Assembly (NCBI GenBank): GCA_013416795.1
Contig: RQSC01000783.1
Span: 1 to 9,704, forward strand
Length of the DNA: 9,704 nt
Direction: 5' to 3'
Origin: Prasinococcaceae sp. CCMP 1430
Lineage: Eukaryota; Plantae; Prasinodermophyta
Positions 1 through 9,704 of the stretch are shown here, piece by piece. A program made the translations under genes and the position numbers. Numbering within the stretch: the stretch's first letter is position 1; the number at the start of each line of letters is the position of its first letter. Under the pieces are notes generated by a model, which searched no databases, was not told the origin of the DNA, and was given only the letters and a program-made list of their open reading frames with translations.

Positions 1-199
1 AAAACATAACAAACTAATAGGCTAACATAGACATGCGAAAAGCCTAACAGACTAAATTGCATAACTAACCTTGCATAAACAAACTCTTACAACAATGCAT
101 GTCTAACTTTTTATAAAATATTTCCTGAAAACAGTACAATAGGATCAATAGGATACAGCACAGATTCAACTAACCATTGTCTCTAAATTTGATATGAAA

Positions 200-226
200 T
201 ACTGATATGGGTTCTTTCCTATTCAG
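200..226 (+). promoter_or_regulatory. 3' splice acceptor for ORF1
   Basis: TACTGAT 200-206, pyrimidine tract, TTCAG|A ATG. Confidence 0.6.
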
Positions 227-227
227 A

Positions 228-617
228 ATGGAAGGACCAAACTTGAAACAACCACAACCTACTCCAGAGGAACAACCAGTGATCCTCTCCAAAGACCAGG
301 AGGAAGGATTGAAGTGGTTGCATCAACACAAGCAGAGATACTTACAATACAACCAGGAGGTTGAAGAAACTGAAGCCAAGCTGAAGAAGGTTGATCAGAG
401 ACTGCAGAAGTTGGAACAAGACAAGAAAAGCTTTCAAGACCTTCTGGAGCTTCTTGAACAAGATATTGACCATTACACAATGGTCAAGGAAGAGATGTAC
501 CTCCCTCATATTAGGACATACACCCACCTAGCCAGAAGACAGAGGAAAGAGATAAGAAGGTTGGAAAGGTATTTGGCCAATGAAGAACCAGAGAACTCTG
601 AAGTAGAATCAGAGTAA
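228..617 (+). CDS. Accessory ORF1, 129-aa coiled-coil protein of unknown function (ORF track starts at 207)
   Basis: E/K/Q/L-rich heptad pattern. Ungapped ~30% identity to ORF2. Acceptor TTCTTTCCTATTCAG ends at 226, just before ATG 228, favouring the MEGPNL start. Confidence 0.8.
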   Translation: MEGPNLKQPQPTPEEQPVILSKDQEEGLKWLHQHKQRYLQYNQEVEETEAKLKKVDQRLQKLEQDKKSFQDLLELLEQDIDHYTMVKEEMYLPHIRTYTHLARRQRKEIRRLERYLANEEPENSEVESE

Positions 618-838
618 ACTTTTTCTTTCTGGCTCTTACAGTGATGTTTTTCTTTTTGTAAATAACTTTTCTCCCAGAAACTATAATGTGATGTTTTTTC
701 TTTTCCAACTGTGTTTTGCTTTTATCAATATATCCTTTTCCTCCTAGTAAACTTGAGTATGGTCTGTTGTGATTTTCTTCCTTAAGATGGCAATTTAGTC
801 CCATATGAGTAATAAATCACTAATTAAAATGATTGCTT

Positions 839-853
839 GACTGATGTGAACAG
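839..853 (+). promoter_or_regulatory. 3' splice acceptor for ORF2
   Basis: GACTGAT 839-845 (also CACTAAT 818-824), AACAG|AC ATG. Confidence 0.5.
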
Positions 854-855
854 AC

Positions 856-1170
856 ATGAGCTTCTTGACTCCTGAAGAAGAGAAAGGCCACTTGGAGCTC
901 ATGGCTCTTAACCACAACCTCACCATCCTCAAGCAAGAAAAGAATCGAGTGGAACAAAGAATGCAGGTGGTGGAAAGAAGGCTAGAGAAGCTCAACAAGA
1001 AGAAAAGACAGCTTGAAGAAGCCCTGGAGGATGTAGAAGATGACATTGGTTTTTATTCTCAGCACAAGGAAGGAAGATTCCTGTCTAGCATTGAACATTT
1101 TAGACACCTGATCAAAGTGGAGAAAAGGAAGATCAAACAGCTGGAACAATCTCTTCTCCAAGGAAAATAA
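856..1170 (+). CDS. Accessory ORF2, 104-aa coiled-coil protein, paralog of ORF1
   Basis: ATG 856 follows AACAG|AC. Heptad pattern. Aligns without gaps to ORF1 (LE..E.DI..Y...KE...L..I....HL......I..LE..L). Confidence 0.82.
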   Translation: MSFLTPEEEKGHLELMALNHNLTILKQEKNRVEQRMQVVERRLEKLNKKKRQLEEALEDVEDDIGFYSQHKEGRFLSSIEHFRHLIKVEKRKIKQLEQSLLQGK

Positions 1171-1383
1171 ACTGAACTCTTGATTTTGCTTTGCTGTCAT
1201 TGGCTTTTTGACTGTAAGATTTATAAATATGAAGTTCCTTTCTTTTCAACCCTGTTTACTATGAAGCAAAATGATTCTGTCTGCCTGTTGAAAATTACAT
1301 CACAAGTAAAAGCCTGACAACATTCAAAACATATGCTTTCTTGAAGTCAGTGACAATATGTGTTTCATTAAAGTCACATGAGT

Positions 1384-1414
1384 AACTAATGTTGCTTTGG
1401 ATGCATGTCTACAG
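1384..1414 (+). promoter_or_regulatory. 3' splice acceptor for ORF3
   Basis: AACTAAT 1384-1390, CTACAG|ATG. Confidence 0.55.
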
Positions 1415-1666
1415 ATGGGAATATATGTGGATAATGACATCAGGAGGCTAAAGATCCTACCCAAGACTGGAGAGGACCTCAATCGATTCCTTCTACTATC
1501 TTTACAATATGACAGAGAGCAATATGCTGATTGGCTAAGGAAGGAACTCTGGGAACTTTTGGAGGACCTGACCTTTGACAATGATGTTATCACCTGGAAT
1601 GTTAACACTTTTGCCAGATTTTTCATCCTTTCTGCTAGGTTTTGGGATATTATTCATAAGAACTAA
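1415..1666 (+). CDS. Accessory ORF3, 83-aa protein of unknown function (ORF track starts at TTG 1397)
   Basis: ATG 1415 directly follows CTACAG, with AACTAAT at 1384-1390 upstream. GC-richer than the AT-rich flanks, with codon style like neighbouring ORFs. No recognisable domain. Confidence 0.6.
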   Translation: MGIYVDNDIRRLKILPKTGEDLNRFLLLSLQYDREQYADWLRKELWELLEDLTFDNDVITWNVNTFARFFILSARFWDIIHKN

Positions 1667-1696
1667 ACTCTTTTAATGTTTTCTTACTAAACTCTT

Positions 1697-1727
1697 TACT
1701 AACAATTGAATTTTGTATGCTGTACAG
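1697..1727 (+). promoter_or_regulatory. 3' splice acceptor for thymidine kinase
   Basis: Perfect TACTAAC 1697-1703, TACAG|ATG. Confidence 0.7.
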
Positions 1728-2294
1728 ATGGCTTCTTACACTGGAAGAATTGAACTGATCATGGGACCCATGTTTGCTGGAAAGACTTCTGAACTCATGA
1801 GGAGGGTCCGAAGACTGCAGATCGCCAAGAAGAAGACCATAGTGTTGAAGCACACTTCAGATACTAGATACCTGCATTTAATGAAAGATTCAGTGATAGC
1901 CCATGACCATATTACCTCTATTCCTGCAGTAACCCTTCATAATCTGAGTGAATTTTTAGAGTGGGAAGAATATGACTGTATTGCTATAGATGAAGGACAT
2001 TTCTTCGAAAATGTCTCAGGATTTGCTGATCAGTGGGCAAATGCAGGGAAGATAGTGATAGTCACCACAATTGATGGCACACAGTCTAGAGAAATGCTTC
2101 CCAGCATTACTCAGCTACTCCCCAAGGCTGAAAGTGTAGTGAAACTCACAGCCATTTGTATGAGATGTGGCAATGAAGCAGCCTTCACTTTTAGAACAGC
2201 TCCACCTGAGGACACCAACATGGTAGGAGGGGCTGACAAATATCAAGCTGTTTGTCGCCTTTGCTTTTTCAAGGCCAAGAAGCAGGCCAACTAA
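1728..2294 (+). CDS. tk: Thymidine kinase, TK1/poxvirus type, 188 aa, intronless (ORF track starts at TTG 1713)
   Basis: P-loop GPMFAGKTSELMRR, DTRY, IAIDEGHFF, GKIVIV..IDGT, Zn pairs CMRC and CRLC, lasso VGGADKY. ATG 1728 directly follows TACAG. Confidence 0.96.
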   Translation: MASYTGRIELIMGPMFAGKTSELMRRVRRLQIAKKKTIVLKHTSDTRYLHLMKDSVIAHDHITSIPAVTLHNLSEFLEWEEYDCIAIDEGHFFENVSGFADQWANAGKIVIVTTIDGTQSREMLPSITQLLPKAESVVKLTAICMRCGNEAAFTFRTAPPEDTNMVGGADKYQAVCRLCFFKAKKQAN

Positions 2295-2551
2295 GCTAGA
2301 TTAGGTTCCATTAGACAAAGGAATATCCTTATCTAGACACTAGCATTATTGAGACTATAGCAATATTTTAGGGAATAGTTTGTAAATAGTTTTGGAAATT
2401 CATGTATGGGTTTTCATTCTGACATTGGACATAAACTGGATTTTTAGATTTCAATAGAAATTCTTTTCAACTTCTAATGGTCTTTTATTCTTTTGTGAGG
2501 TGTTTTCTTTGTCAAAATGAATGCAGGATGTGATAGATTTCTGGAATTATG

Positions 2552-2649
2552 GTAAGTCTTTTCACACAAAAATTTCTAACATACCTTGTGTTTTTCTGTT
2601 TGCTTTGTTTTGATGTTTTGGGTTTTGTGACAACTGGGAACTAAAACAG
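2552..2649 (+). other. Candidate intron or acceptor directly upstream of gag
   Basis: G|GTAAGT at 2552, CTAAC 2576-2580, long T/GT-rich tract, AAACAG| ends at 2649, 9 nt before the gag ATG. Confidence 0.55.
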
Positions 2650-2658
2650 ACTTGAACC

Positions 2659-3846
2659 ATGGAACAACAAGTGACTTTAACTTTGGCTGAACTGAAAACT
2701 ATGATGGAAAACATTGGACCAAAACAGAACAAAGAAAAGAATTCTCATATTGAACCCAAAGTATTCAAAGGAGGCATTCTTCCTGATGCCAAAGATTGGC
2801 TTCATGACTATGAAGATGCTGCCTTGAATAACCACTGGACTGAAGAAACCAAGTGTAGACAACTGAATAGGTACACTGATGGACCTGTCAAACTTTGGCT
2901 TAGAAGACAAACAGACCAAGTCAAGGCATCCTGGGACCTTTTGAAACAAGGTATTTTAGATGAGTTTGCTCCTAGAAACCAAGCTGACTTTTATAGAGAA
3001 CATATCAAGGAATACCAACAAGGAAACCTTCACATTGTTGAACATTGTGAAAATGTACTGGCAATCTGCCACAAGATTAATGCCAACATGCCAGAAGAAG
3101 ACAAACTTCATTACCTATTGGACAGCATGAACCCCATTATTGCAGGAAAACTGAGGGAGACTGTACCACCTATCAACAATATCTCTGAACTGATGGCTAG
3201 GGCCTCAGTTTTGTATGAATCCAACAAGACAACCAAAAGAAAACTGGAGGCCATGAAAAGGGTCAGTGCTACCCTATCTCATGCCAAACCTAGTTTCAGA
3301 CCAGCTTTCAAACCTCAGAGACCAGCAACTGTGGTCCAACCTCAGAAACCTCACATGCAGAGCCTTTGGGACTCCATGATGATAGAAGAAGCTGACCTTG
3401 AGGAAGACCAGACCACAACAAACAACAACCATCCAAAAAACGGGCCAATCTTCAATACAGGAGACAGACAGTGTCTTTACTGCCATTACACCAACCACCT
3501 AACCAAAGACTGTACCTTGAAACAAAACAACCTGTGCTGGAACTGCAAGGAGCCAGGACATCGATTCACAGCTTGCAAGAAGACTTGGGTGAACCCCAGG
3601 AAGAAGAACTATCCCAACAAAACTTGGATCAACCCAGACTTGAAGAAGACTCAGGAGACTCAGAAGCCACAAAACAAACCCAAACCTCAGTTCAAGAAAT
3701 CTTCTCAGAAGATCCAGAACCAAATGAAGGTACCAGTACATGCTGTAGAAGAGGAGAAACACCAGGAAACTCAAGAGGAAACGGAGGAAGTAGACATTCT
3801 GCAACTGAATCAGACTTATGCAGAAGCCATGGAAATGGAGGAATAA
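2659..3846 (+). CDS. gag: Gag (Ty3/Gypsy capsid, two CCHC zinc knuckles, acidic tail)
   Basis: Capsid-like PKVFKG...DAKDWLHDYE...W...K...L..Y..G...W. CX2CX4HX4C motifs at 3472-3513 (CLYCHYTNHLTKDC) and 3535-3576 (CWNCKEPGHRFTAC). Confidence 0.95.
   Translation: MEQQVTLTLAELKTMMENIGPKQNKEKNSHIEPKVFKGGILPDAKDWLHDYEDAALNNHWTEETKCRQLNRYTDGPVKLWLRRQTDQVKASWDLLKQGILDEFAPRNQADFYREHIKEYQQGNLHIVEHCENVLAICHKINANMPEEDKLHYLLDSMNPIIAGKLRETVPPINNISELMARASVLYESNKTTKRKLEAMKRVSATLSHAKPSFRPAFKPQRPATVVQPQKPHMQSLWDSMMIEEADLEEDQTTTNNNHPKNGPIFNTGDRQCLYCHYTNHLTKDCTLKQNNLCWNCKEPGHRFTACKKTWVNPRKKNYPNKTWINPDLKKTQETQKPQNKPKPQFKKSSQKIQNQMKVPVHAVEEEKHQETQEETEEVDILQLNQTYAEAMEMEE
3435..3441 (+). promoter_or_regulatory. 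Candidate -1 ribosomal frameshift slippery heptamer A_AAA_AAC
   Basis: Perfect X_XXY_YYZ in gag phase (CCA AAA AAC). The pol frame opens 33 nt upstream (TGA at 3399-3401) and stays open across the remaining ~400 nt of gag. I found no other perfect in-phase heptamer in the overlap and no convincing stimulatory stem. Confidence 0.7.
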
Positions 3847-6800
3847 CCAATAACTCTGTAACCTCTCCCACCAAGATAACAGACTGTTACAGAAAACAAC
3901 GACACTACAAGCAAAAGAAAGGGAGACGGAGATTGAAACAACATGACTTGAAAATACAACAAAAACATCAACTTGACTGGGATGTGGCAGGTATGCGGGC
4001 GGAAGCTGAAAGATGCTGGGGATCGAAATTGGAAAAGAGCAATGGAGAGAGGCTCGAGCTCGTGCGAGGGACCAACAGCCTGCTAAGTGCTACTCCGATG
4101 GCCAACCCCAAAGAAAAGAAGGGGTGGACAACTCTCAAGGAGGTACCCCTGAAGAAGTCGTCCAAGTCGAACCGAGAGGTCCTTGGAGAGGTCTATCAGG
4201 AGGGAGTGTCCCGGAGCATGGAACGGCAAGCGTTGTGGTGGACTGAGTTCCATACTGAAACCTCCACAGTTTCTCCCTCTCTTCTGGGGAAAAGAAAAAG
4301 GGTCGTTTTTGAAGAGGATGAACCTGCCACACTCTGTCAATACTCTGTACATACTCCAGAAGAACCTGTGAGGAAACACCTGAGAGTTAGTAAAACATTA
4401 CTCATAGAGATAGAAATTGAGGGCAAACCTTTACAAGTGCTTGTAGATACTGGTGCTGCACTGTCTTTGTTAAGAGAAAGAACTGCACGTCATCTTGTTC
4501 CTTCCCGTCGAATAGAACCTTGCTCTGCAATTAATCTGGTAATGGCTGATGGAAGAGTCACACCAGTACAAACCAGAGCATGGGTAAGACTCTCTCTAGG
4601 TGGGAAACTCCATGAGCTGCCAATCAGAATCCTGAATGGAGTCAGGTACCCTATGATAATGGGCCTGGACATCCTGAATGCCCTAGATGGCATCATTGAT
4701 TTAAAGAAAAGAATTGTGGAGCTCAATGGGATCCCATATAAAATCCTAGGAGAGGTTGAAGAGGAATGCACTGTAAGATTGTCTGAGAAAACTATTCTCA
4801 GACCTAGGACAGTGACATCTATTGTCTTAGAGTCACCAATAGGAGGAGTCACCCCATCTTATGGTGTTTATGTATCTGACCCTCTGGAATCTCTATACTA
4901 TCAGAAAAGAGTTCTAGTTCCATGTGCTACTCTATGTTTTGACAAAGGCAAAGCTAATCTTCTGGTAGTCAATCCAACCTTTCATGAGATCACTCTAGAG
5001 AAAGGCCTGCATATTGCTCGAATACAATCCCTAGCAGAAGTCACCACTATAGACTTTGAAAAGAATCAATCTACAGGAGCACCAGAGATTGATGAAGAGA
5101 CTTGGAAGGAGGTTGTGGAGAAGCTTGAATTACACAAAACAGAGTGTAGTAATCAACAGAGAGATCAACTATTGAGTTTGTTGCACAAACACAAAGAGTG
5201 TTTCACATTGCATTTTAGGCACATAGCAGGTAGACAGACACTCATTAAGCACAAAATAGACACTGGAGATGCACAACCCATCTATTCAAATCCTTATAGG
5301 AAGGCACCAGCTGAAAGAAAGATTATTGAAGAAGAAATCAATAAGATGTTGGAGGCAGAAGTGATTGAACCTGCTCAATCACCTTGGGGATTTCCTATTG
5401 TGCTTGCTAAAAAGAAGGATGGAACCTGGAGATTCTGTATTGACTACAGAAAGCTCAATGATGTCACCAAGAAATGGGTATATCCTCTTCCAAGAATTGA
5501 TGATATGATTGATACTCTTTCTGGCAATGAATGGTTTTCTGCCCTTGATTGTAGCTCTGGTTATTGGCAGATTGAAGTCGAAGAGGCTGACAAGCCCAAA
5601 ACTGCTTTTAATTCTATCATGGGACAACATCAATTCAGAGTAATGCCTTTTGGTCTCAGCAATGCTCCAAGAACATTTTCAAGAATGATGGACTTAGTTC
5701 TTGCGGGGCTGAAGTGGCATCAATGTCTTGTTTACCTTGATGATATTCTTATCTTTGGGAAGACATGGGCAGAACACTTGGAACGTCTTTCCATTGTGTT
5801 GGATCGATTGAAGAAACATAATATACTACTGAAGCCAAGCAAATGCAAATTTGCAAGGAAGTCTGTCACATATCTGGGTGTTATCATTGATAAGAATGGA
5901 GTCAGACCTGATCCTGAAAAGATAAAGGCCATATTGGACTTTCCAAGGCCAACTATTGTCAAAGAAATTCGGGGATTTTTGGGCATGTGCTCATATCACC
6001 GAAGATTTGTCAAGAATTTTTCGAGAATTGCAGCCCCACTTTCTTCTTTGACAAAGCAAAACCAACCTTTGATCTGGACTGAAAAAGAAGAAGAGGCTTT
6101 TATAGCCCTAAAGAAGGCTTTGACAGAAGCACCTTTGCTGGCCTTTCCTGACTTCTCCCTTCCATTCATTCTATATACAGATGCATCTGATGTAGGCATC
6201 TCAGCTGAACTTTCTCAAAAGACAGAGAAAGGAGAACAAGTCATTGCTTATGCCAGCAAGAAACTCAGTGATGCTGAAAAGCATTATATTCCTAGTGAGA
6301 AAGAATGTCTGGCTGTTATCTGGGCCTTGGATCTATGGAGGTGTTATCTTTTGGGAGCTCAATTCACTATTGTGACTGACAACAGTGCCTTATTATGGCT
6401 ACAATCTATCAGCCATCAAAAAGGGAAGCTTGCCAGATGGGCAATACAGATTCAAGAGTATAATTTCATAGTAAAACATAGAAAAGGAGCCCTCAACCAC
6501 ACTGACCCAACTTCAAGAAACCCTGTTGGGGAACCAGGATTTCAAAAGAATGATGAACACTTTCAGACAAGAATAGACTTTGATCTCGCAGCTCTGGAAG
6601 TAGATCTGGCTGGAGGCTGGCTTGAAAGATTAAAGAAAGAACAAAAAGAAGATCAAGACCTTTGGAAAGGAGATATGAGTCTCCTTAGGGTGGATGAAAA
6701 TGTTTTGAGTCTCAAAAATCAAAAGAAAAAGAAAGAACTACAAAAGAAATTTAGAATTCAAGATGATCTTTTAGAACATAGAGATTCTATAAATGGGCAA

Positions 6801-7898
6801 GAAGTATGGCAGACTGTTGTACCTGAAGAGTTCAGAAATGATATTTTAGAGTCACATCACTCAGGGCTTGGTGGTGGTCATGTTGGAATATTCAAAACTT
6901 GGATGAAAATAAGAAAACACTTTTGGTGGCCTAAATTAAAGAGGAATGTCAAGAAATGGATTCTGAACTGTAGAGTCTGTGAACTTAACAGTGAAAAGAA
7001 ACAGAAGGCCCCAATCCAGGTAACACCAACCTATGGCCCCATGGAAGCACTTCAGATAGATTGGATTGAAGAACTCACTCAATCCAAGCACAAAAACAAA
7101 CACATCTTGGTTGTGATTGACACCTTCACAAAATGGATTGAACTCTTTGCCTGCCCTTCTAGAATAAGCACCAGAGTTGCTCAACTCCTTGTAAAAGAGG
7201 TGTTTTGTAGATTTGGCTGTCCTCAAAGATTGATCTCTGATCGGGGTAAAGCTTTCACTTCTGACTTGTTCAAAGCTGTTTGTAAAAGAATGGGCATATG
7301 GAACCAATTTTCTGCATCCTATCACCCTCAATCTCATGGAGGAGTAGAGAGAGTCAATAGGACTATTGAAGGCCTCATTAGAAAACATGTCAATAAATTT
7401 CAAGACAACTGGGATGACTACTTACCTGCAGTGGCTTTTGCATATAACACCGCTGTTAATGAAGCCACTGGGTATTCCCCTTTCTTTCTAATGTATGGTC
7501 GAGAACCTCAGATTCCAGGCTCTTTGATCTTCGAGAAAAAGCACAAGACTGCTTCTACTTCAGAATGGATCGAATCTCAACAGAAGACCTTTCAACAAGT
7601 CCACGAGATGGTTCATCGAGTCCTGGACGACGAGAAACGACGTCAAGCCAAGAAGACTTCACAAAGGAAGGTGGAAACATATCAACCTGGCGAGCTGGTG
7701 AAGATCAAGCTTCAATCATCACAACCTAAGAAAGGTGGACCCAAGACAAGCAAGAAGTTACTTCCAAGGTGGAAAGGACCGTTTGTAATAATCAAGCAAC
7801 TTGGACCAGCTACCTATTTAGTCAAATCTGCTGCAAACCGATCCAAGAATGTTCTTACCATGCATTTGAATAACCTTGCTAGATATAATGTAGAATAG
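3441..7898 (+). CDS. pol: Pol polyprotein (transframe region, aspartic protease, RT, RNase H, integrase), -1 frame to gag; 5' boundary set at the inferred frameshift
   Basis: DTG 4446-4454. RT KKDGTWRFCIDYRKLN, PFGL and YLDD 5733-5744. RNase H TDAS at ~6177, EKECLAV and TDNSAL. Integrase HHCC 6855-6980, D7059/D7239/E7347 (D-35-E) and WKGPF at 7770. Frame open from 3402; the track start at 3471 is GTG. Confidence 0.97.
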   Translation, partial: RANLQYRRQTVSLLPLHQPPNQRLYLETKQPVLELQGARTSIHSLQEDLGEPQEEELSQQNLDQPRLEEDSGDSEATKQTQTSVQEIFSEDPEPNEGTSTCCRRGETPGNSRGNGGSRHSATESDLCRSHGNGGITNNSVTSPTKITDCYRKQRHYKQKKGRRRLKQHDLKIQQKHQLDWDVAGMRAEAERCWGSKLEKSNGERLELVRGTNSLLSATPMANPKEKKGWTTLKEVPLKKSSKSNREVLGEVYQEGVSRSMERQALWWTEFHTETSTVSPSLLGKRKRVVFEEDEPATLCQYSVHTPEEPVRKHLRVSKTLLIEIEIEGKPLQVLVDTGAALSLLRERTARHLVPSRRIEPCSAINLVMADGRVTPVQTRAWVRLSLGGKLHELPIRILNGVRYPMIMGLDILNALDGIIDLKKRIVELNGIPYKILGEVEEECTVRLSEKTILRPRTVTSIVLESPIGGVTPSYGVYVSDPLESLYYQKRVLVPCATLCFDKGKANLLVVNPTFHEITLEKGLHIARIQSLAEVTTIDFEKNQSTGAPEIDEETWKEVVEKLELHKTECSNQQRDQLLSLLHKHKECFTLHFRHIAGRQTLIKHKIDTGDAQPIYSNPYRKAPAERKIIEEEINKMLEAEVIEPAQSPWGFPIVLAKKKDGTWRFCIDYRKLNDVTKKWVYPLPRIDDMIDTLSGNEWFSALDCSSGYWQIEVEEADKPKTAFNSIMGQHQFRVMPFGLSNAPRTFSRMMDLVLAGLKWHQCLVYLDDILIFGKTWAEHLERLSIVLDRLKKHNILLKPSKCKFARKSVTYLGVIIDKNGVRPDPEKIKAILDFPRPTIVKEIRGFLGMCSYHRRFVKNFSRIAAPLSSLTKQNQPLIWTEKEEEAFIALKKALTEAPLLAFPDFSLPFILYTDASDVGISAELSQKTEKGEQVIAYASKKLSDAEKHYIPSEKECLAVIWALDLWRCYLLGAQFTIVTDNSALLWLQSISHQKGKLARWAIQIQEYNFIVKHRKGALNHTDPTSRNPVGEPGFQKNDEHFQTRIDFDLAALEVDLAGGWLERLKKEQKEDQDLWKGDMSLLRVDENVLSLKNQKKKKELQKKFRIQDDLLEHRDSINGQEVWQTVVPEEFRNDILESHHSGLGGGHVGIFKTWMKIRKHFWWPKLKRNVKKWILNCRVCELNSEKKQKAPIQVTPTYGPMEALQIDWIEELTQSKHKNKHILVVIDTFTKWIELFACPSRISTRVAQLLVKEVFCRFGCPQRLISDRGKAFTSDLFKAVCKRMGIWNQFSASYHPQSHGGVERVNRTIEGLIRKHVNKFQDNWDDYLPAVAFAYNTAVNEATGYSPFFLMYGREPQIPGSLIFEKKHKTASTSEWIESQQKTFQQVHEMVHRVLDDEKRRQAKKTSQRKVETYQPGELVKIKLQSSQPKKGGPKTSKKLLPRWKGPFVIIKQLGPATYLVKSAANRSKNVLTMHLNNLARYNVE

Positions 7899-7903
7899 TG
7901 GTT

Positions 7904-7921
7904 GTCATTGAGGACAATGAC
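7904..7921. other. Inverted repeat just upstream of the PPT
   Basis: GTCATTG-AGGA-CAATGAC, a perfect 7-bp stem. Confidence 0.8.
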
Positions 7922-7933
7922 CTTTGTTAACTT

Positions 7934-7945
7934 GGAGGAGAAAGA
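7934..7945 (+). promoter_or_regulatory. Polypurine tract (plus-strand primer)
   Basis: GGAGGAGAAAGA, 12 purines directly before TGTAAC and 36 nt after the pol stop. Confidence 0.9.
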
Positions 7946-8505
7946 TGTAACCTGTCAGTTCTAAAAAGAGTTCACCTTATCCCTTATGGTTTTACTTGTT
8001 CTTAACACAAATTTACATCCTTGAAAAGTTTCATGTTTTATTTCTGTTTTTCTATGTACTGAAGGACAATGACCTTTTGATTAATCTGATGGGACCTCCT
8101 TAGTCCCAGAACAATGTCATTTCAACCAATAAGAGTTCCTTTTCACTGAACATTTCTAGAATAGAAGAATTTTGTTCAATAAGGACAATTTCCTTTTCAT
8201 TTACTTGTCAAATTCCTCCACTCCAAACACTTCTATTGATCTGGTGGGGAATTCCAACCAATCATATTACTTCTTTTGTTCGTTCCTAGAATACCCCTAT
8301 TCAATTAAACTGTTACATGACTTTTCATGTATCTATCAAACCTTACTTTTCATGATTTCTTTGATGTAACGATTTTTGTACAGGAGGGGTATAAATAACC
8401 CCCTTGAAGAAGAAGAAATAGATTACTGACTACTTTCTGTGTGTCACGTCTTACAGATTCTCTAAAAGTCCTGTGATTGTCCTAGAAGAGAACCAGATCC
8501 TAACA
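7946..8505 (+). repeat. Long terminal repeat (~560 bp), only one copy in the window
   Basis: Begins TGTAAC right after the PPT and ends CTAACA 5 nt before the PBS, with an internal TATA box. Boundaries are inferred from PPT and PBS, not from a second copy. Confidence 0.8.
8390..8397 (+). promoter_or_regulatory. LTR TATA box
   Basis: GGGG-TATAAATA about 110 nt from the LTR 3' end. CCAAT motifs lie upstream in U3. Confidence 0.7.
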
Positions 8506-8510
8506 AATTT

Positions 8511-8528
8511 TGGTGGAAGGACTGCGGT
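8511..8528 (+). promoter_or_regulatory. tRNA primer-binding site
   Basis: TGGTGGAAGGACTGCGGT: TGG complements CCA and lies just after the LTR end. The reverse complement ...UCCACCA is compatible with tRNA-Ala (unverified). Confidence 0.75.
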
Positions 8529-8843
8529 ACGTAAAATGTTTTTAGTGGTTTGTCTTCACACACACCACTTAAATTTTTTTCTTTTGTGGGGATAAATTAA
8601 AAACGCGACTGCACGACGGAAACATTTCCGTCAAAATATTCGACTACTGAGGACCAAGAAGACAAAACAGAAAATGGAGGGTCCTCAACGACCCGCGAAC
8701 CCTACTAACAAAAATTTTAGATAGGAAGAAGGACCGCCATGCGGCCTTCAATTCTAACCTACTCTAACATATATACTATATATATTTTATCTTAGGTAGG
8801 ACGAACCTTCACAGGGTCGTCTTGGACGAACCCTGGGGTTCTG

Positions 8844-8909
8844 GTAAGTAAAATTTCTCTCTTCCTCTTCCTCTTTTCTTTATCTATCTATCTATATATA
8901 ATTTTGCAG
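8844..8909 (+). other. Candidate 66-nt spliceosomal intron in the leader
   Basis: CTG|GTAAGT, pyrimidine and AT-rich body, TTTTGCAG|ATG. Confidence 0.65.
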
Positions 8910-8942
8910 ATGGAGGCGGCTGGATCGACGGATCCAAGCCAG

Positions 8943-8998
8943 GTAAGTAAAATTTTCTTTTGGCCGATTTCGGCCATATTTTCTTCCTATTCCTGCAG
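8943..8998 (+). other. Candidate 56-nt spliceosomal intron in the leader
   Basis: CAG|GTAAGT, ending TTCTTCCTATTCCTGCAG|. The first 13 nt are identical to the 8844 donor. Confidence 0.6.
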
Positions 8999-9340
8999 TT
9001 TTTCGTTTTGTTAGGTAGTGTTAGTATAGGACCATAGGTCCTACTTAGTGTTAGGTCGTTCCTATCTTTTCTATTCTCCCTATCTCTCTTCTTCTTTCTC
9101 CCTTTATCTTTTTCTCTTCCTCTCTTCTTTTCCTTTCTTCCTAGCCTAGATTTCGCTAGCTAGGATCGTTCCTAGACTAGGCTAGACTAGTTTGGTGTTG
9201 CCGTTTTAGTCTCTATATCTATCTATATGTCTTTCTAGCGCTAGGTTAGTTTTAGACAGGGTCACCTACAGGACCGACTGCTGGTCGCTAGGACCATGCA
9301 GTAGACCCGACCAAGGTCTCGGTCGAGACCTTAGGTCAAG

Positions 9341-9474
9341 GTGAGTCGAACCGCTTGGTCGTTTTGACCAAGGGTTCGTTATTATTCCTACTCTATCTCT
9401 TTTCCTAACCTCTAATTTTCATATATATATGTAAAATATATATATATTTTCCTTCCTCGACGCCGGCCGACTAG
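9341..9474 (+). other. Candidate leader intron (acceptor 9474 or 9480)
   Basis: AAG|GTGAGT, CTAAC 9405-9409, (AT)n and pyrimidine tract. The acceptor is uncertain. Confidence 0.4.
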
Positions 9475-9511
9475 GCCCAGCGACCAAGGAGGACCGGGAC
9501 TACGTCCCGAG

Positions 9512-9558
9512 GTAAGTTTTATATATATAACTAACATATATATATACGTTTATTGTAG
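9512..9558 (+). other. Candidate 47-nt spliceosomal intron in the leader
   Basis: GAG|GTAAGT, AACTAAC branch site (CTAAC 9531-9535), TTGTAG|. Very AT-rich between GC-rich flanks. Confidence 0.7.
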
Positions 9559-9648
9559 GAAAGTCGCCCTTAAGGCGACATATGTCGACATTATGTCGAC
9601 TTCGTCAGTCCGTACAGGACGACGAAAAACAACACAAAAACAAAAACG

Positions 9649-9674
9649 CACACACACACACACACACACACACA
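9649..9674. repeat. (CA)13 microsatellite
   Basis: Direct reading. Confidence 0.95.
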
Positions 9675-9704
9675 CTAACGGACAATAACCCTATTAACAA
9701 AACC

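What the first reader, a model, noticed from the sequence alone, without database searches (positions are those of the whole stretch)
1728..2294. An LTR retrotransposon that appears to carry its own intact thymidine kinase
Seen: a complete intronless TK1-family ORF lies 364 nt upstream of gag on the same strand. It has the same CpG depletion and the same acceptor-before-ATG context as gag. Known: TKs are common in poxviruses, herpesviruses and giant viruses. Some retroviruses carry dUTPase, and some lentiviruses raise dNTP pools through Vpx-mediated SAMHD1 degradation. I know of no Ty3/Gypsy element encoding TK. Inference: the element supplies dTTP for reverse transcription in non-dividing cells such as cysts, spores or gametes. 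The compact size and matching composition suggest long residence rather than recent capture.
Basis: partly seen in the sequence, partly recalled or inferred. Interest (0 to 1): 0.95.

Follow-up and report, generated by a model that had tools for sequence, protein, structure and literature searches.

The report
Thymidine kinase gene inside a retrotransposon
An intact, compact thymidine kinase gene sits with three small unknown genes just upstream of gag in what looks like one transcription unit of an intact Ty3/gypsy retroelement, which would be the first such element known to carry this enzyme; only one copy and one LTR are visible, so it is likely but not proven.

Summary
Bases 1728-2294 encode a complete 188-aa TK1-type thymidine kinase, exactly 364 nt upstream of an intact gag (2659-3846) and pol (3471-7898) of a Ty3/gypsy element. 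It is on the same strand and shows the same extreme CpG depletion.

TK keeps 20 of the 21 most conserved TK1 columns. It models as a TK1 fold and has no regulatory tails.

All of them, TK and gag share a branch-box plus acceptor signal just before the ATG.

No trace of the LTR-like segment (7946-8505) lies between TK and gag. CpG depletion runs unbroken from base 1 to about 8520 and then stops sharply.

A TGG primer-site-like motif and a splice donor follow the LTR-like segment. Both window ends lie in the same rare A+C-rich tract. Together these suggest the window is a permuted or tandem unit: LTR, leader, orfA-C, TK, gag, pol, LTR.

I found no second copy, no 5' LTR and no RNA data. The nearest TK is 53% identical, and gag has no detectable relative.

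Carriage of TK by the element is therefore the best reading (about 0.65) but is not shown. The proposed dTTP-supply role is inference.

The parts
1..206 (+). Non-coding A+C-rich, TAAC-rich tract with stacked branch-box/YAG acceptor-like sites. Probably the last part of a long 5' leader.
   Evidence: A+C is at least 70% in 1-100. Only 1.3% of 100-nt windows reach that, and the other non-gag case is the far end of the window, 9565-9704. ACTAA[CT] boxes at 13, 64 and 169.
207..617 (+). orfA, 136 aa, coiled-coil-like, no family. An in-frame ATG at 228 directly follows ttcag.
   Evidence: Paralog of orfB: BLASTP 34% identity over 74 aa, E 1e-11.
856..1170 (+). orfB, 104 aa, coiled-coil-like paralog of orfA.
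   Evidence: Only sub-threshold coiled-coil Pfam hits. ACTAAT box at 819 and aacag 2 nt before the ATG.
1415..1666 (+). orfC, 83 aa, no detectable relative.
   Evidence: ACTAAT box at 1385 and ctacag|ATG. Single-sequence AF2 model has pLDDT 61, too low to use.
1698..1727 (+). Branch box (ACTAAC) and 3' splice acceptor (tgtacag) immediately before the TK start codon.
1728..2294 (+). Thymidine kinase, TK1 / type II family. 188 aa, intact, minimal core without N- or C-terminal extensions.
   Evidence: Pfam PF00265 E 2.8e-53, full length. PDB TK1 hits E 2e-48. Keeps 20/21 columns that are at least 95% conserved in 202 TK1s. AF2 pLDDT 82, TM 0.8-0.9 to human and T. brucei TK1.
2295..2658 (+). TK-gag spacer. 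It holds an intron-like segment, 2552-2643: GTAAGT donor, CTAAC/ACTAAA boxes, and an acag acceptor 12 nt before the gag ATG.
   Evidence: No similarity to the LTR-like segment.
2659..3846 (+). gag, 395 aa. Capsid-like domain plus two CCHC zinc knuckles. Intact.
   Evidence: Retrotrans_gag E 1.5e-4, just under the Pfam cut-off. Knuckles seen in the translation. No homolog found.
3471..7898 (+). pol ORF, 1475 codons, -1 frame relative to gag, intact. Domains: PR 4392-4700, RT 5409-5888, RNase H 6075-6461, integrase 6819-7328, SH3-like 7689-7886. No chromodomain and no dUTPase.
   Evidence: Nearest relatives are about 40% identical Ty3/gypsy pols of arachnids, nematodes, vertebrates and algae.
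7934..7945 (+). Polypurine tract (GGAGGAGAAAGA) abutting the TG start of the LTR-like segment.
   Evidence: read from the sequence
7946..8505 (+). LTR-like segment, TG...CA, CpG-poor, TATA box at 8390. Its 3' end is uncertain: an alternative end lies at 8317 (GTTACA, an exact inverse of the TGTAAC start).
   Evidence: No second copy in the window.
8511..8526 (+). Primer-binding-site-like TGG motif 5 nt after the LTR-like end, followed at 8527 by a GTACGT splice donor.
   Evidence: Complementarity to a host tRNA could not be tested.
8521..9704 (+). CpG-rich, hairpin-rich, ORF-less stretch with five strong + strand donors and matching acceptors. Either the 5' leader of the element seen in a tandem or permuted arrangement (favoured), or unrelated flanking DNA.
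   Evidence: CpG o/e 1.1. Fold z-scores down to -7.3 against about 0 for controls. Donors at 8527, 8844, 8943, 9341 and 9512. No ORF longer than 41 aa.

Best explanation
The window shows nearly one full unit of an intact, unusually complex Ty3/gypsy (Metaviridae-type) LTR retroelement. Its internal region carries four accessory genes 5' of gag: two paralogous coiled-coil proteins, one 83-aa orphan, and a TK1-type thymidine kinase.

Shown:
- TK is complete and conserved like a working TK1.
- The stretch 1-8520 is one compositional block.
- Each ORF start, TK and gag included, is preceded by a branch box and a 3' splice acceptor.
- No LTR lies between TK and gag.

Inferred:
- Transcription starts in the 5' LTR and runs through a long structured leader.
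- Each ORF is translated from its own mRNA. That mRNA is made by splicing a leader donor (or a trans-spliced leader) to the acceptor in front of that ORF. The unspliced RNA serves as the genome.
- The kinase, which lacks the tails that tie cellular TK1 to the cell cycle, phosphorylates thymidine and raises dTTP for the element's reverse transcription when host salvage is low.
- TK was captured as an intronless cDNA and has been kept under selection.
For: TK identity and integrity:
- Pfam E 2.8e-53; PDB TK1 E 2e-48.
- Keeps 20/21, 26/29 and 47/51 of the columns conserved at 95%, 90% and 80% or more.
- AF2 pLDDT 82, TM 0.8-0.9 to TK1 structures.
- Its 44-52% identity to animal, kinetoplastid, heterolobosean and ciliate TK1s equals the 43-56% seen among those lineages. 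So it evolves like a constrained TK1.
- It ends 6 residues after the last Cys pair.

One block:
- CpG o/e is 0-0.25 in every ORF and spacer from 1 to 8520, then 1.1.

Shared start signal:
- Of 185 + strand ATG triplets in 1-8520, only six have an ACTAA box 20-65 nt upstream plus a YAG within 15 nt.
- Four of these are the starts of orfA (228), orfB, orfC and TK. gag has the same arrangement with its box 19 nt upstream.
- No ACTAA[CT] box occurs anywhere from TK to the LTR-like end.
- The only strong donor left of the LTR (2552) forms a 5'UTR intron for gag. That makes sense only if upstream sequence belongs to gag's transcript.

No LTR remnant in 1-2700, while gag and pol are unbroken.

Permuted or tandem unit:
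- TG...CA segment with TATA box, then TGG 5 nt later, then a GTACGT donor.
- Both window ends lie in the same rare A+C-rich, TAAC-rich tract.
- The stretch after the LTR is strongly structured.
Against: - Only one LTR-like segment is visible, and its 3' end is not fixed.
- No second copy of TK, gag or the DNA exists in any collection searched. Copy number, target-site duplications and selection across copies are therefore untested.
- The PBS-like motif could not be matched to a tRNA.
- The supposed leader has CpG o/e 1.1, unlike the rest of the element.
- Continuity across the window ends rests on composition only. There is no sequence overlap, and contigs often break in low-complexity tracts anyway.
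- Codon usage does not discriminate: TK versus gag-pol r = 0.72, but 0.63-0.69 against out-of-frame pol.
- There is no RNA evidence for any splice.
Confidence: 0.65

Rival explanations
1. TK and orfA-C are neighbours, not cargo. They would be a compact cluster of host genes, or genes of another silenced mobile element. An LTR-less, 5'-truncated Ty3/gypsy copy lies beside it. The shared CpG depletion reflects a common methylated chromatin domain.
For: The 5' LTR is absent from the window. No other copy is available to show linkage. CpG depletion is a regional property in many genomes, and codon usage is not discriminating. AATAAA/ATTAAA signals lie downstream of orfA and orfB, as independent genes would have.
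Against: - gag and pol are fully intact, which is unusual for a truncated relic.
- gag carries the same branch-box/acceptor start context as TK and orfA-C, plus a 5'UTR intron.
- All five ORFs are intronless, on one strand and 61-364 nt apart. The only clearly different DNA in the window is intron-dense.
- The depletion ends exactly at the LTR-like end.
Confidence: 0.2
2. The retroelement is nested in an integrated large DNA virus or similar element, and that element owns the TK and the small ORFs.
For: TK genes are common in large DNA viruses. The single most similar protein (53%) is an ankyrin-TK fusion on a giant-virus-like contig.
Against: - That similarity is no higher than to rodent or trypanosome TK1 (48-52%).
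- The tree is star-like, with at most 17% support for any sister.
- IMG/VR viral TKs are only 28-39% identical.
- A nested insertion should show a 5' LTR next to gag, and none is there.
- orfA-C have no viral family hits.
Confidence: 0.07
3. Assembly artefact: the contig joins a retroelement to unrelated sequence, or collapses several copies.
For: Both window ends lie in low-complexity A+C-rich sequence next to an (AC)n run, where short-read assemblies break. The source cannot be inspected.
Against: No compositional or signal discontinuity exists anywhere between base 1 and about 8520. All ORFs are intact. A chimeric join would have to fall in the 364-nt spacer without leaving a trace.
Confidence: 0.05

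Closest known systems
dUTPase carried by retroviruses and some LTR retrotransposons (bdelloid Juno/Vesta/TelKA, basidiomycete elements; PMC5408684)
   Same: A nucleotide-metabolism enzyme of cellular origin carried by a reverse-transcribing element, presumably to condition the dNTP pool for cDNA synthesis.
   Different: dUTPase is a domain inside pol and removes dUTP. Here the enzyme is a salvage kinase in a separate ORF upstream of gag. No dUTPase domain is present in this pol.
Cellular TK1 (human 1w4r/1xbt; Trypanosoma brucei 5fuv)
   Same: Same family and fold. P-loop, DEG.FF motif, two Cys pairs of the zinc lasso and the GG..Y lasso motif are all present.
   Different: Only 41-49% identical. 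It lacks the N- and C-terminal extensions of animal TK1. From established knowledge of human TK1, the C-terminal tail carries the signal for cell-cycle-dependent degradation. Departures at four well-conserved columns: Q91H, D95N, L115I, F124L.
Poxvirus-type TK of large DNA viruses (structures 2j87, 9k6k)
   Same: A minimal TK1 core of about 180 aa without regulatory tails, carried by a genetic parasite.
   Different: Those are DNA viruses, about 40% identical. No specific relationship appears in the tree.
LTR retrotransposons with extra ORFs or captured host domains (bdelloid ORF3 types, PMC5408684; orchid Ty3/gypsy with an m6A demethylase domain, PMC9289625; plant Retand, PMC11963269)
   Same: Ty3/gypsy elements that have gained enzymatic or unknown accessory genes.
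   Different: Per PMC5408684 and the PMC11963269 title, the bdelloid ORF3 and Retand extra sequence lie downstream of pol. Here four separate ORFs lie 5' of gag. In two full-text searches, no paper on LTR retrotransposons mentioned one that encodes TK.
Spliced expression in complex retroviruses and in C. elegans Cer1 (PMC10309623)
   Same: Splice donors and acceptors inside the genomic RNA, with accessory proteins made from spliced mRNAs.
   Different: Splicing here is predicted from sequence signals only. Poly(A)-signal-then-acceptor spacing before orfB and orfC would also fit operon-style trans-splicing.
Lentiviral Vpx/SAMHD1 axis (own knowledge)
   Same: Works alike in outcome: it raises dNTP supply for reverse transcription in non-cycling cells.
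   Different: Unrelated protein and mechanism: degradation of a host dNTPase versus direct nucleoside salvage.

Membership tests
TK1 / type II thymidine kinase (Pfam PF00265) | Full-length match to the family profile above the curated cut-off | tested here: met
   180.8 bits against a cut-off of 20.6, profile 1-176 of 176
TK1 / type II thymidine kinase (Pfam PF00265) | P-loop G..(F/M).GK(T/S) and the DEG.FF catalytic segment | tested here: met
   G13 P14 M15 G18 K19 and D88 E89 F92 fall in invariant columns. Q91 is replaced by H, a residue seen in 5% of 202 TK1s.
TK1 / type II thymidine kinase (Pfam PF00265) | Zinc-binding lasso domain with two Cys pairs and the GG..Y motif | tested here: met
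   Both Cys pairs, G167 and Y172 are aligned with human TK1
TK1 / type II thymidine kinase (Pfam PF00265) | TK1 three-dimensional fold | tested here: met
   AF2 pLDDT 81.9. Foldseek TM 0.79-0.84 (query) and 0.89-0.93 (target) to 1w4r, 1xbt and 5fuv.
TK1 / type II thymidine kinase (Pfam PF00265) | Thymidine phosphorylating activity | not testable with these tools
   Sequence and model only
Ty3/gypsy (Metaviridae) LTR retrotransposon | gag with capsid-like domain and CCHC knuckles | tested here: met
   Retrotrans_gag E 1.5e-4 (22.4 bits, cut-off 24.1) and two CX2CX4HX4C motifs
Ty3/gypsy (Metaviridae) LTR retrotransposon | pol with order PR-RT-RNase H-IN and Ty3/gypsy-type relatives | tested here: met
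   Pfam domains in that order. Best hits are Ty3/gypsy pols at about 40% identity.
Ty3/gypsy (Metaviridae) LTR retrotransposon | Two long terminal repeats flanking the internal region | tested here: inconclusive
   One TG...CA segment after a polypurine tract (7934-8505). No second copy in the window. The left end of the element is outside the window.
Ty3/gypsy (Metaviridae) LTR retrotransposon | Primer binding site complementary to a host tRNA next to the 5' LTR | not testable with these tools
   TGG motif 5 nt after the LTR-like end. No host tRNA set; only 3 tRNAs in the fetched loci and none match.
Ty3/gypsy (Metaviridae) LTR retrotransposon | Target-site duplication and multiple dispersed copies | not testable with these tools
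No related locus found.
Retroelement with a captured cellular gene as internal cargo | Cargo gene lies between the LTRs and recurs in independent copies | not testable with these tools
   Single copy only
Retroelement with a captured cellular gene as internal cargo | Cargo is intronless, co-oriented, and shares composition and expression signals with gag-pol | tested here: met

The most novel reading that the evidence does not exclude
This would be a previously unseen lineage of complex Metaviridae-like retroelements. It keeps a cassette of at least four accessory genes 5' of gag and expresses each through its own splice acceptor from a long structured leader. One of the four is a deregulated TK1 that makes the element's reverse transcription independent of the host's S-phase thymidine salvage. 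That would be a first case of nucleoside-salvage capture by an LTR retrotransposon.
Probability: 0.45. Interest if true: 0.8.

Novelty: new variant of a known kind. Interest (0 to 1): 0.62.

Why it matters
Reverse-transcribing elements are known to adjust dNTP pools through dUTPase or, in some lentiviruses, through Vpx. A thymidine kinase would add direct nucleoside salvage to that list, a strategy so far associated with large DNA viruses. It would also show that an LTR retrotransposon can hold a multi-gene accessory cassette upstream of gag, with retrovirus-like splice control. If confirmed in several copies, it gives a clean natural system for asking when dNTP supply limits retrotransposition and how captured host genes are trimmed and kept.

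Tried and rejected
Searches for other copies, all negative:
- Exact-product look-ups for TK, gag and orfA.
- Word-indexed protein searches with TK, pol and gag.
- An exhaustive HMMER search of 1.84 billion representatives with TK.
- Back-translated scans with TK and gag in IMG/VR, and with gag in JGI metagenomes and prokaryotic genomes.
- An exact 25-mer from the spacer in IMG/VR.
- The one metagenome hit (L062) is only a zinc-knuckle-level match.

PBS-tRNA matching failed for lack of host tRNAs.

Codon-usage correlation was dropped as evidence, because out-of-frame controls score almost as high.

The TK phylogeny gave a star tree with no supported sister, so no donor lineage can be named.

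Rfam and tRNA scans of the window found nothing above threshold.

The orfC structure model was too poor to search with.

Pfam and PHROGs gave nothing for orfA-C, the gag-PR stretch or the PR-RT linker, so no dUTPase.

A canonical -1 slippery heptamer was looked for in the gag/pol overlap and not found.

A recent processed retrocopy of host TK was considered and rejected. There is no poly(A) remnant after the stop, and there is a precise acceptor at the ATG.

Full report
**What is in the window**

Six + strand ORFs fill bases 207-7898:
- orfA, 207-617
- orfB, 856-1170
- orfC, 1415-1666
- TK, 1728-2294
- gag, 2659-3846
- pol, 3471-7898, in the -1 frame relative to gag

Pfam identifies TK over its whole length: E 2.8e-53, profile 1-176 of 176. 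In pol it finds a protease, RT, RNase H, integrase zinc finger and core, and a Tf2-type SH3 domain, in Ty3/gypsy order. gag gives a near-threshold Retrotrans_gag hit and shows two CCHC knuckles. gag and pol have no stops or frame breaks beyond their natural overlap.

**The kinase**

- It matches solved TK1 structures at E 2e-48.
- In an alignment with 202 TK1 sequences it keeps the commonest residue in 20 of 21 columns conserved at 95% or more, and in 47 of 51 conserved at 80% or more. The four departures are mild: Q91H, D95N, L115I, F124L.
- An AlphaFold model built on a 12-sequence alignment has pLDDT 82. It superposes on human and trypanosome TK1 with TM 0.8-0.9.
- The protein starts four residues before the first strand and ends six residues after the last Cys pair. 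It therefore lacks the extensions of animal TK1. From established knowledge of human TK1, the C-terminal tail mediates cell-cycle-dependent degradation. That this kinase is therefore constitutive is my inference.

**Origin of the kinase**

The exhaustive search of 1.84 billion representatives found nothing above 53% identity. That best hit is an ankyrin-TK fusion on a giant-virus-like contig. Rodent, Trypanosoma cruzi and Acrasis TK1 follow at 47-52%.

These values equal the 43-56% found among those lineages themselves. So the gene has diverged like a constrained TK1 of an independent deep lineage. A neighbour-joining tree is star-like, and no sister has more than 17% bootstrap support. IMG/VR viral TKs are only 28-39% identical. 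No donor can be named.

**Is TK part of the element? Evidence inside the window**

1. Composition. CpG o/e is 0.0-0.25 in every ORF and every spacer from base 1 to about 8520, then 1.1 from 8521 on. TpG/CpA is raised, as expected from CpG decay. TK (0.15) sits between gag (0.06) and pol (0.24).

2. Start signals.
   - On the + strand of 1-8520 there are only six ACTAA[CT] boxes, all within 1-1700.
   - Of 185 ATG triplets, six have such a box 20-65 nt upstream plus a YAG within 15 nt. Four of the six are the starts of orfA (the in-frame ATG at 228), orfB, orfC and TK.
   - gag has ACTAAA then acag 12 nt before its ATG.
   - The only strong donor left of the LTR (GTAAGT at 2552) defines a 92-nt intron in gag's 5' UTR.
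   - A gag gene needs such an acceptor only if upstream sequence has to be removed from its mRNA.

3. No LTR between TK and gag. Neither seed-based repeat finding nor a permissive blastn finds any trace of 7899-8530 in 1-2700. Either the internal region extends left beyond base 1, or an otherwise perfect gag-pol has lost its 5' LTR.

4. The right-hand end.
   - A polypurine tract (7934-7945) abuts a TG...CA segment (7946-8505) with a TATA box at 8390.
   - Five bases later comes TGG, in the place of a primer binding site, followed at once by a GTACGT donor.
   - The next 1.2 kb has no ORF over 41 aa. It has five strong + strand donors with acceptors.
   - It folds far better than shuffled controls in six of eight 150-nt pieces, with z down to -7.3. 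Eight non-coding controls elsewhere give z between -1.7 and +1.2.
   - This is how the start of a retroelement looks, not its downstream flank.

5. The window ends. The last 140 bases and the first 100 bases of the window are both at least 70% A+C and rich in TAAC motifs. Only 1.3% of 100-nt windows reach that composition.

Taken together, I read the window as a permuted or tandem unit: LTR, PBS, leader, orfA, orfB, orfC, TK, gag, pol, PPT, LTR.

This is inference. There is no sequence overlap between the ends, assemblies often break in such tracts, and the CpG-rich leader is unlike the rest.

**What could not be done**

No second copy exists in any collection I could reach. Copy number, target-site duplications, LTR pairs and selection across copies are therefore untested.

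- The host is unknown.
- The PBS could not be matched to a tRNA.
- Codon usage is uninformative, because out-of-frame controls correlate almost as well.
- There is no transcript evidence.

**How it probably works**

Shown:
- An intact TK1-type enzyme gene.
- Five co-oriented ORFs, each with its own branch box and acceptor.
- One compositional block.

Inferred:
- A promoter in the 5' LTR drives a genomic RNA.
- Leader donors (8527 and later ones) are spliced to the acceptor in front of each ORF, giving one mRNA per protein.
- AATAAA/ATTAAA signals lie 40-45 nt before the orfB and orfC acceptors. They would equally fit operon-style processing with a trans-spliced leader. The two cannot be told apart here.
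- The tail-less kinase would raise dTMP, and hence dTTP, for cDNA synthesis when host salvage is off.
- orfA and orfB are paralogs (34% identity, E 1e-11) with coiled-coil character. Their role and that of orfC are unknown.

**Comparison with what is known**

- dUTPase in retroviruses, bdelloid LTR elements and basidiomycete LTR elements is the nearest precedent for nucleotide-metabolism cargo (PMC5408684). It is a pol domain with a different activity, and this pol has none.
- Ty3/gypsy elements do capture host enzymatic domains (PMC9289625) and extra ORFs (PMC5408684, PMC11963269).
- In two full-text searches, no paper on LTR retrotransposons mentioned one that encodes TK, and I know of none.
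- Minimal TK1 genes are typical of poxvirus-like DNA viruses.
- Splice sites within genomic RNA are known from complex retroviruses and Cer1 (PMC10309623).

**Verdict**

The main rival is a neighbouring gene cluster beside an LTR-less copy (about 0.2). A nested position in a DNA virus (about 0.07) and an assembly artefact (about 0.05) are less likely.

If the reading holds, this is a new variant of a known kind, and of real interest to people who work on retroelements and dNTP control.

Noticed in passing
window 207-617 and 856-1170: Two tandem paralogous coiled-coil ORFs (34% identity over 74 aa, E 1e-11) with no family assignment. They look like a duplicated accessory gene.
   Followed up: partly
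window 1415-1666: orfC, 83 aa, has no homolog in Pfam or PHROGs. The single-sequence AF2 model is only pLDDT 61. The ORF listing starts it at TTG 1397, but the ATG at 1415 directly follows an acceptor.
   Followed up: partly
window 8521-9704: The stretch is CpG-rich (o/e 1.1), hairpin-dense and has many short palindromes around GGACC/GGTCC and GTCGAC. It also has five strong donors (CAG|GTAAGTA type). Fold z-scores reach -7.3.
   Followed up: partly
window 8910-8942: A 33-nt exon-like piece begins with ATG right after ttgcag and ends in phase at a GTAAGT donor. Spliced to the cag|ATG acceptors of orfC or TK it would stay in frame. It could be a leader mini-exon or an upstream ORF.
   Followed up: no
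window 3471-3846: The gag/pol overlap (-1 frame) contains no canonical X_XXY_YYZ slippery heptamer. How pol is reached is unclear.
   Followed up: partly
window 811, 823, 1367: AATAAA/ATTAAA signals lie 40-45 nt upstream of the acceptors of orfB and orfC. This is operon-like spacing of a poly(A) signal and a (trans-)splice site.
   Followed up: no
window 7911-7925, 8063-8077, 8182-8196: The 15-mer AGGACAATGACCTTT occurs three times (the third copy matches 13/15). One copy lies just before the polypurine tract and two lie in the LTR-like segment. It may be a protein-binding site.
   Followed up: no
window 3801-4400 and 7401-8000: Two patches inside pol have CpG o/e of about 0.5-0.6, against at most 0.25 elsewhere in the element. 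The first (gag end to protease) has no domain hit.
   Followed up: partly
L059 10001-11353 (GCA_027387505.1 contig): The most similar TK in the libraries (53%) is fused to N-terminal ankyrin repeats. It sits on a 175-kb contig with giant-virus-like genes.
   Followed up: partly
one search hits P0212-P0222: Many database TK1 proteins carry two or three tandem TK domains, up to 637 aa.
   Followed up: no
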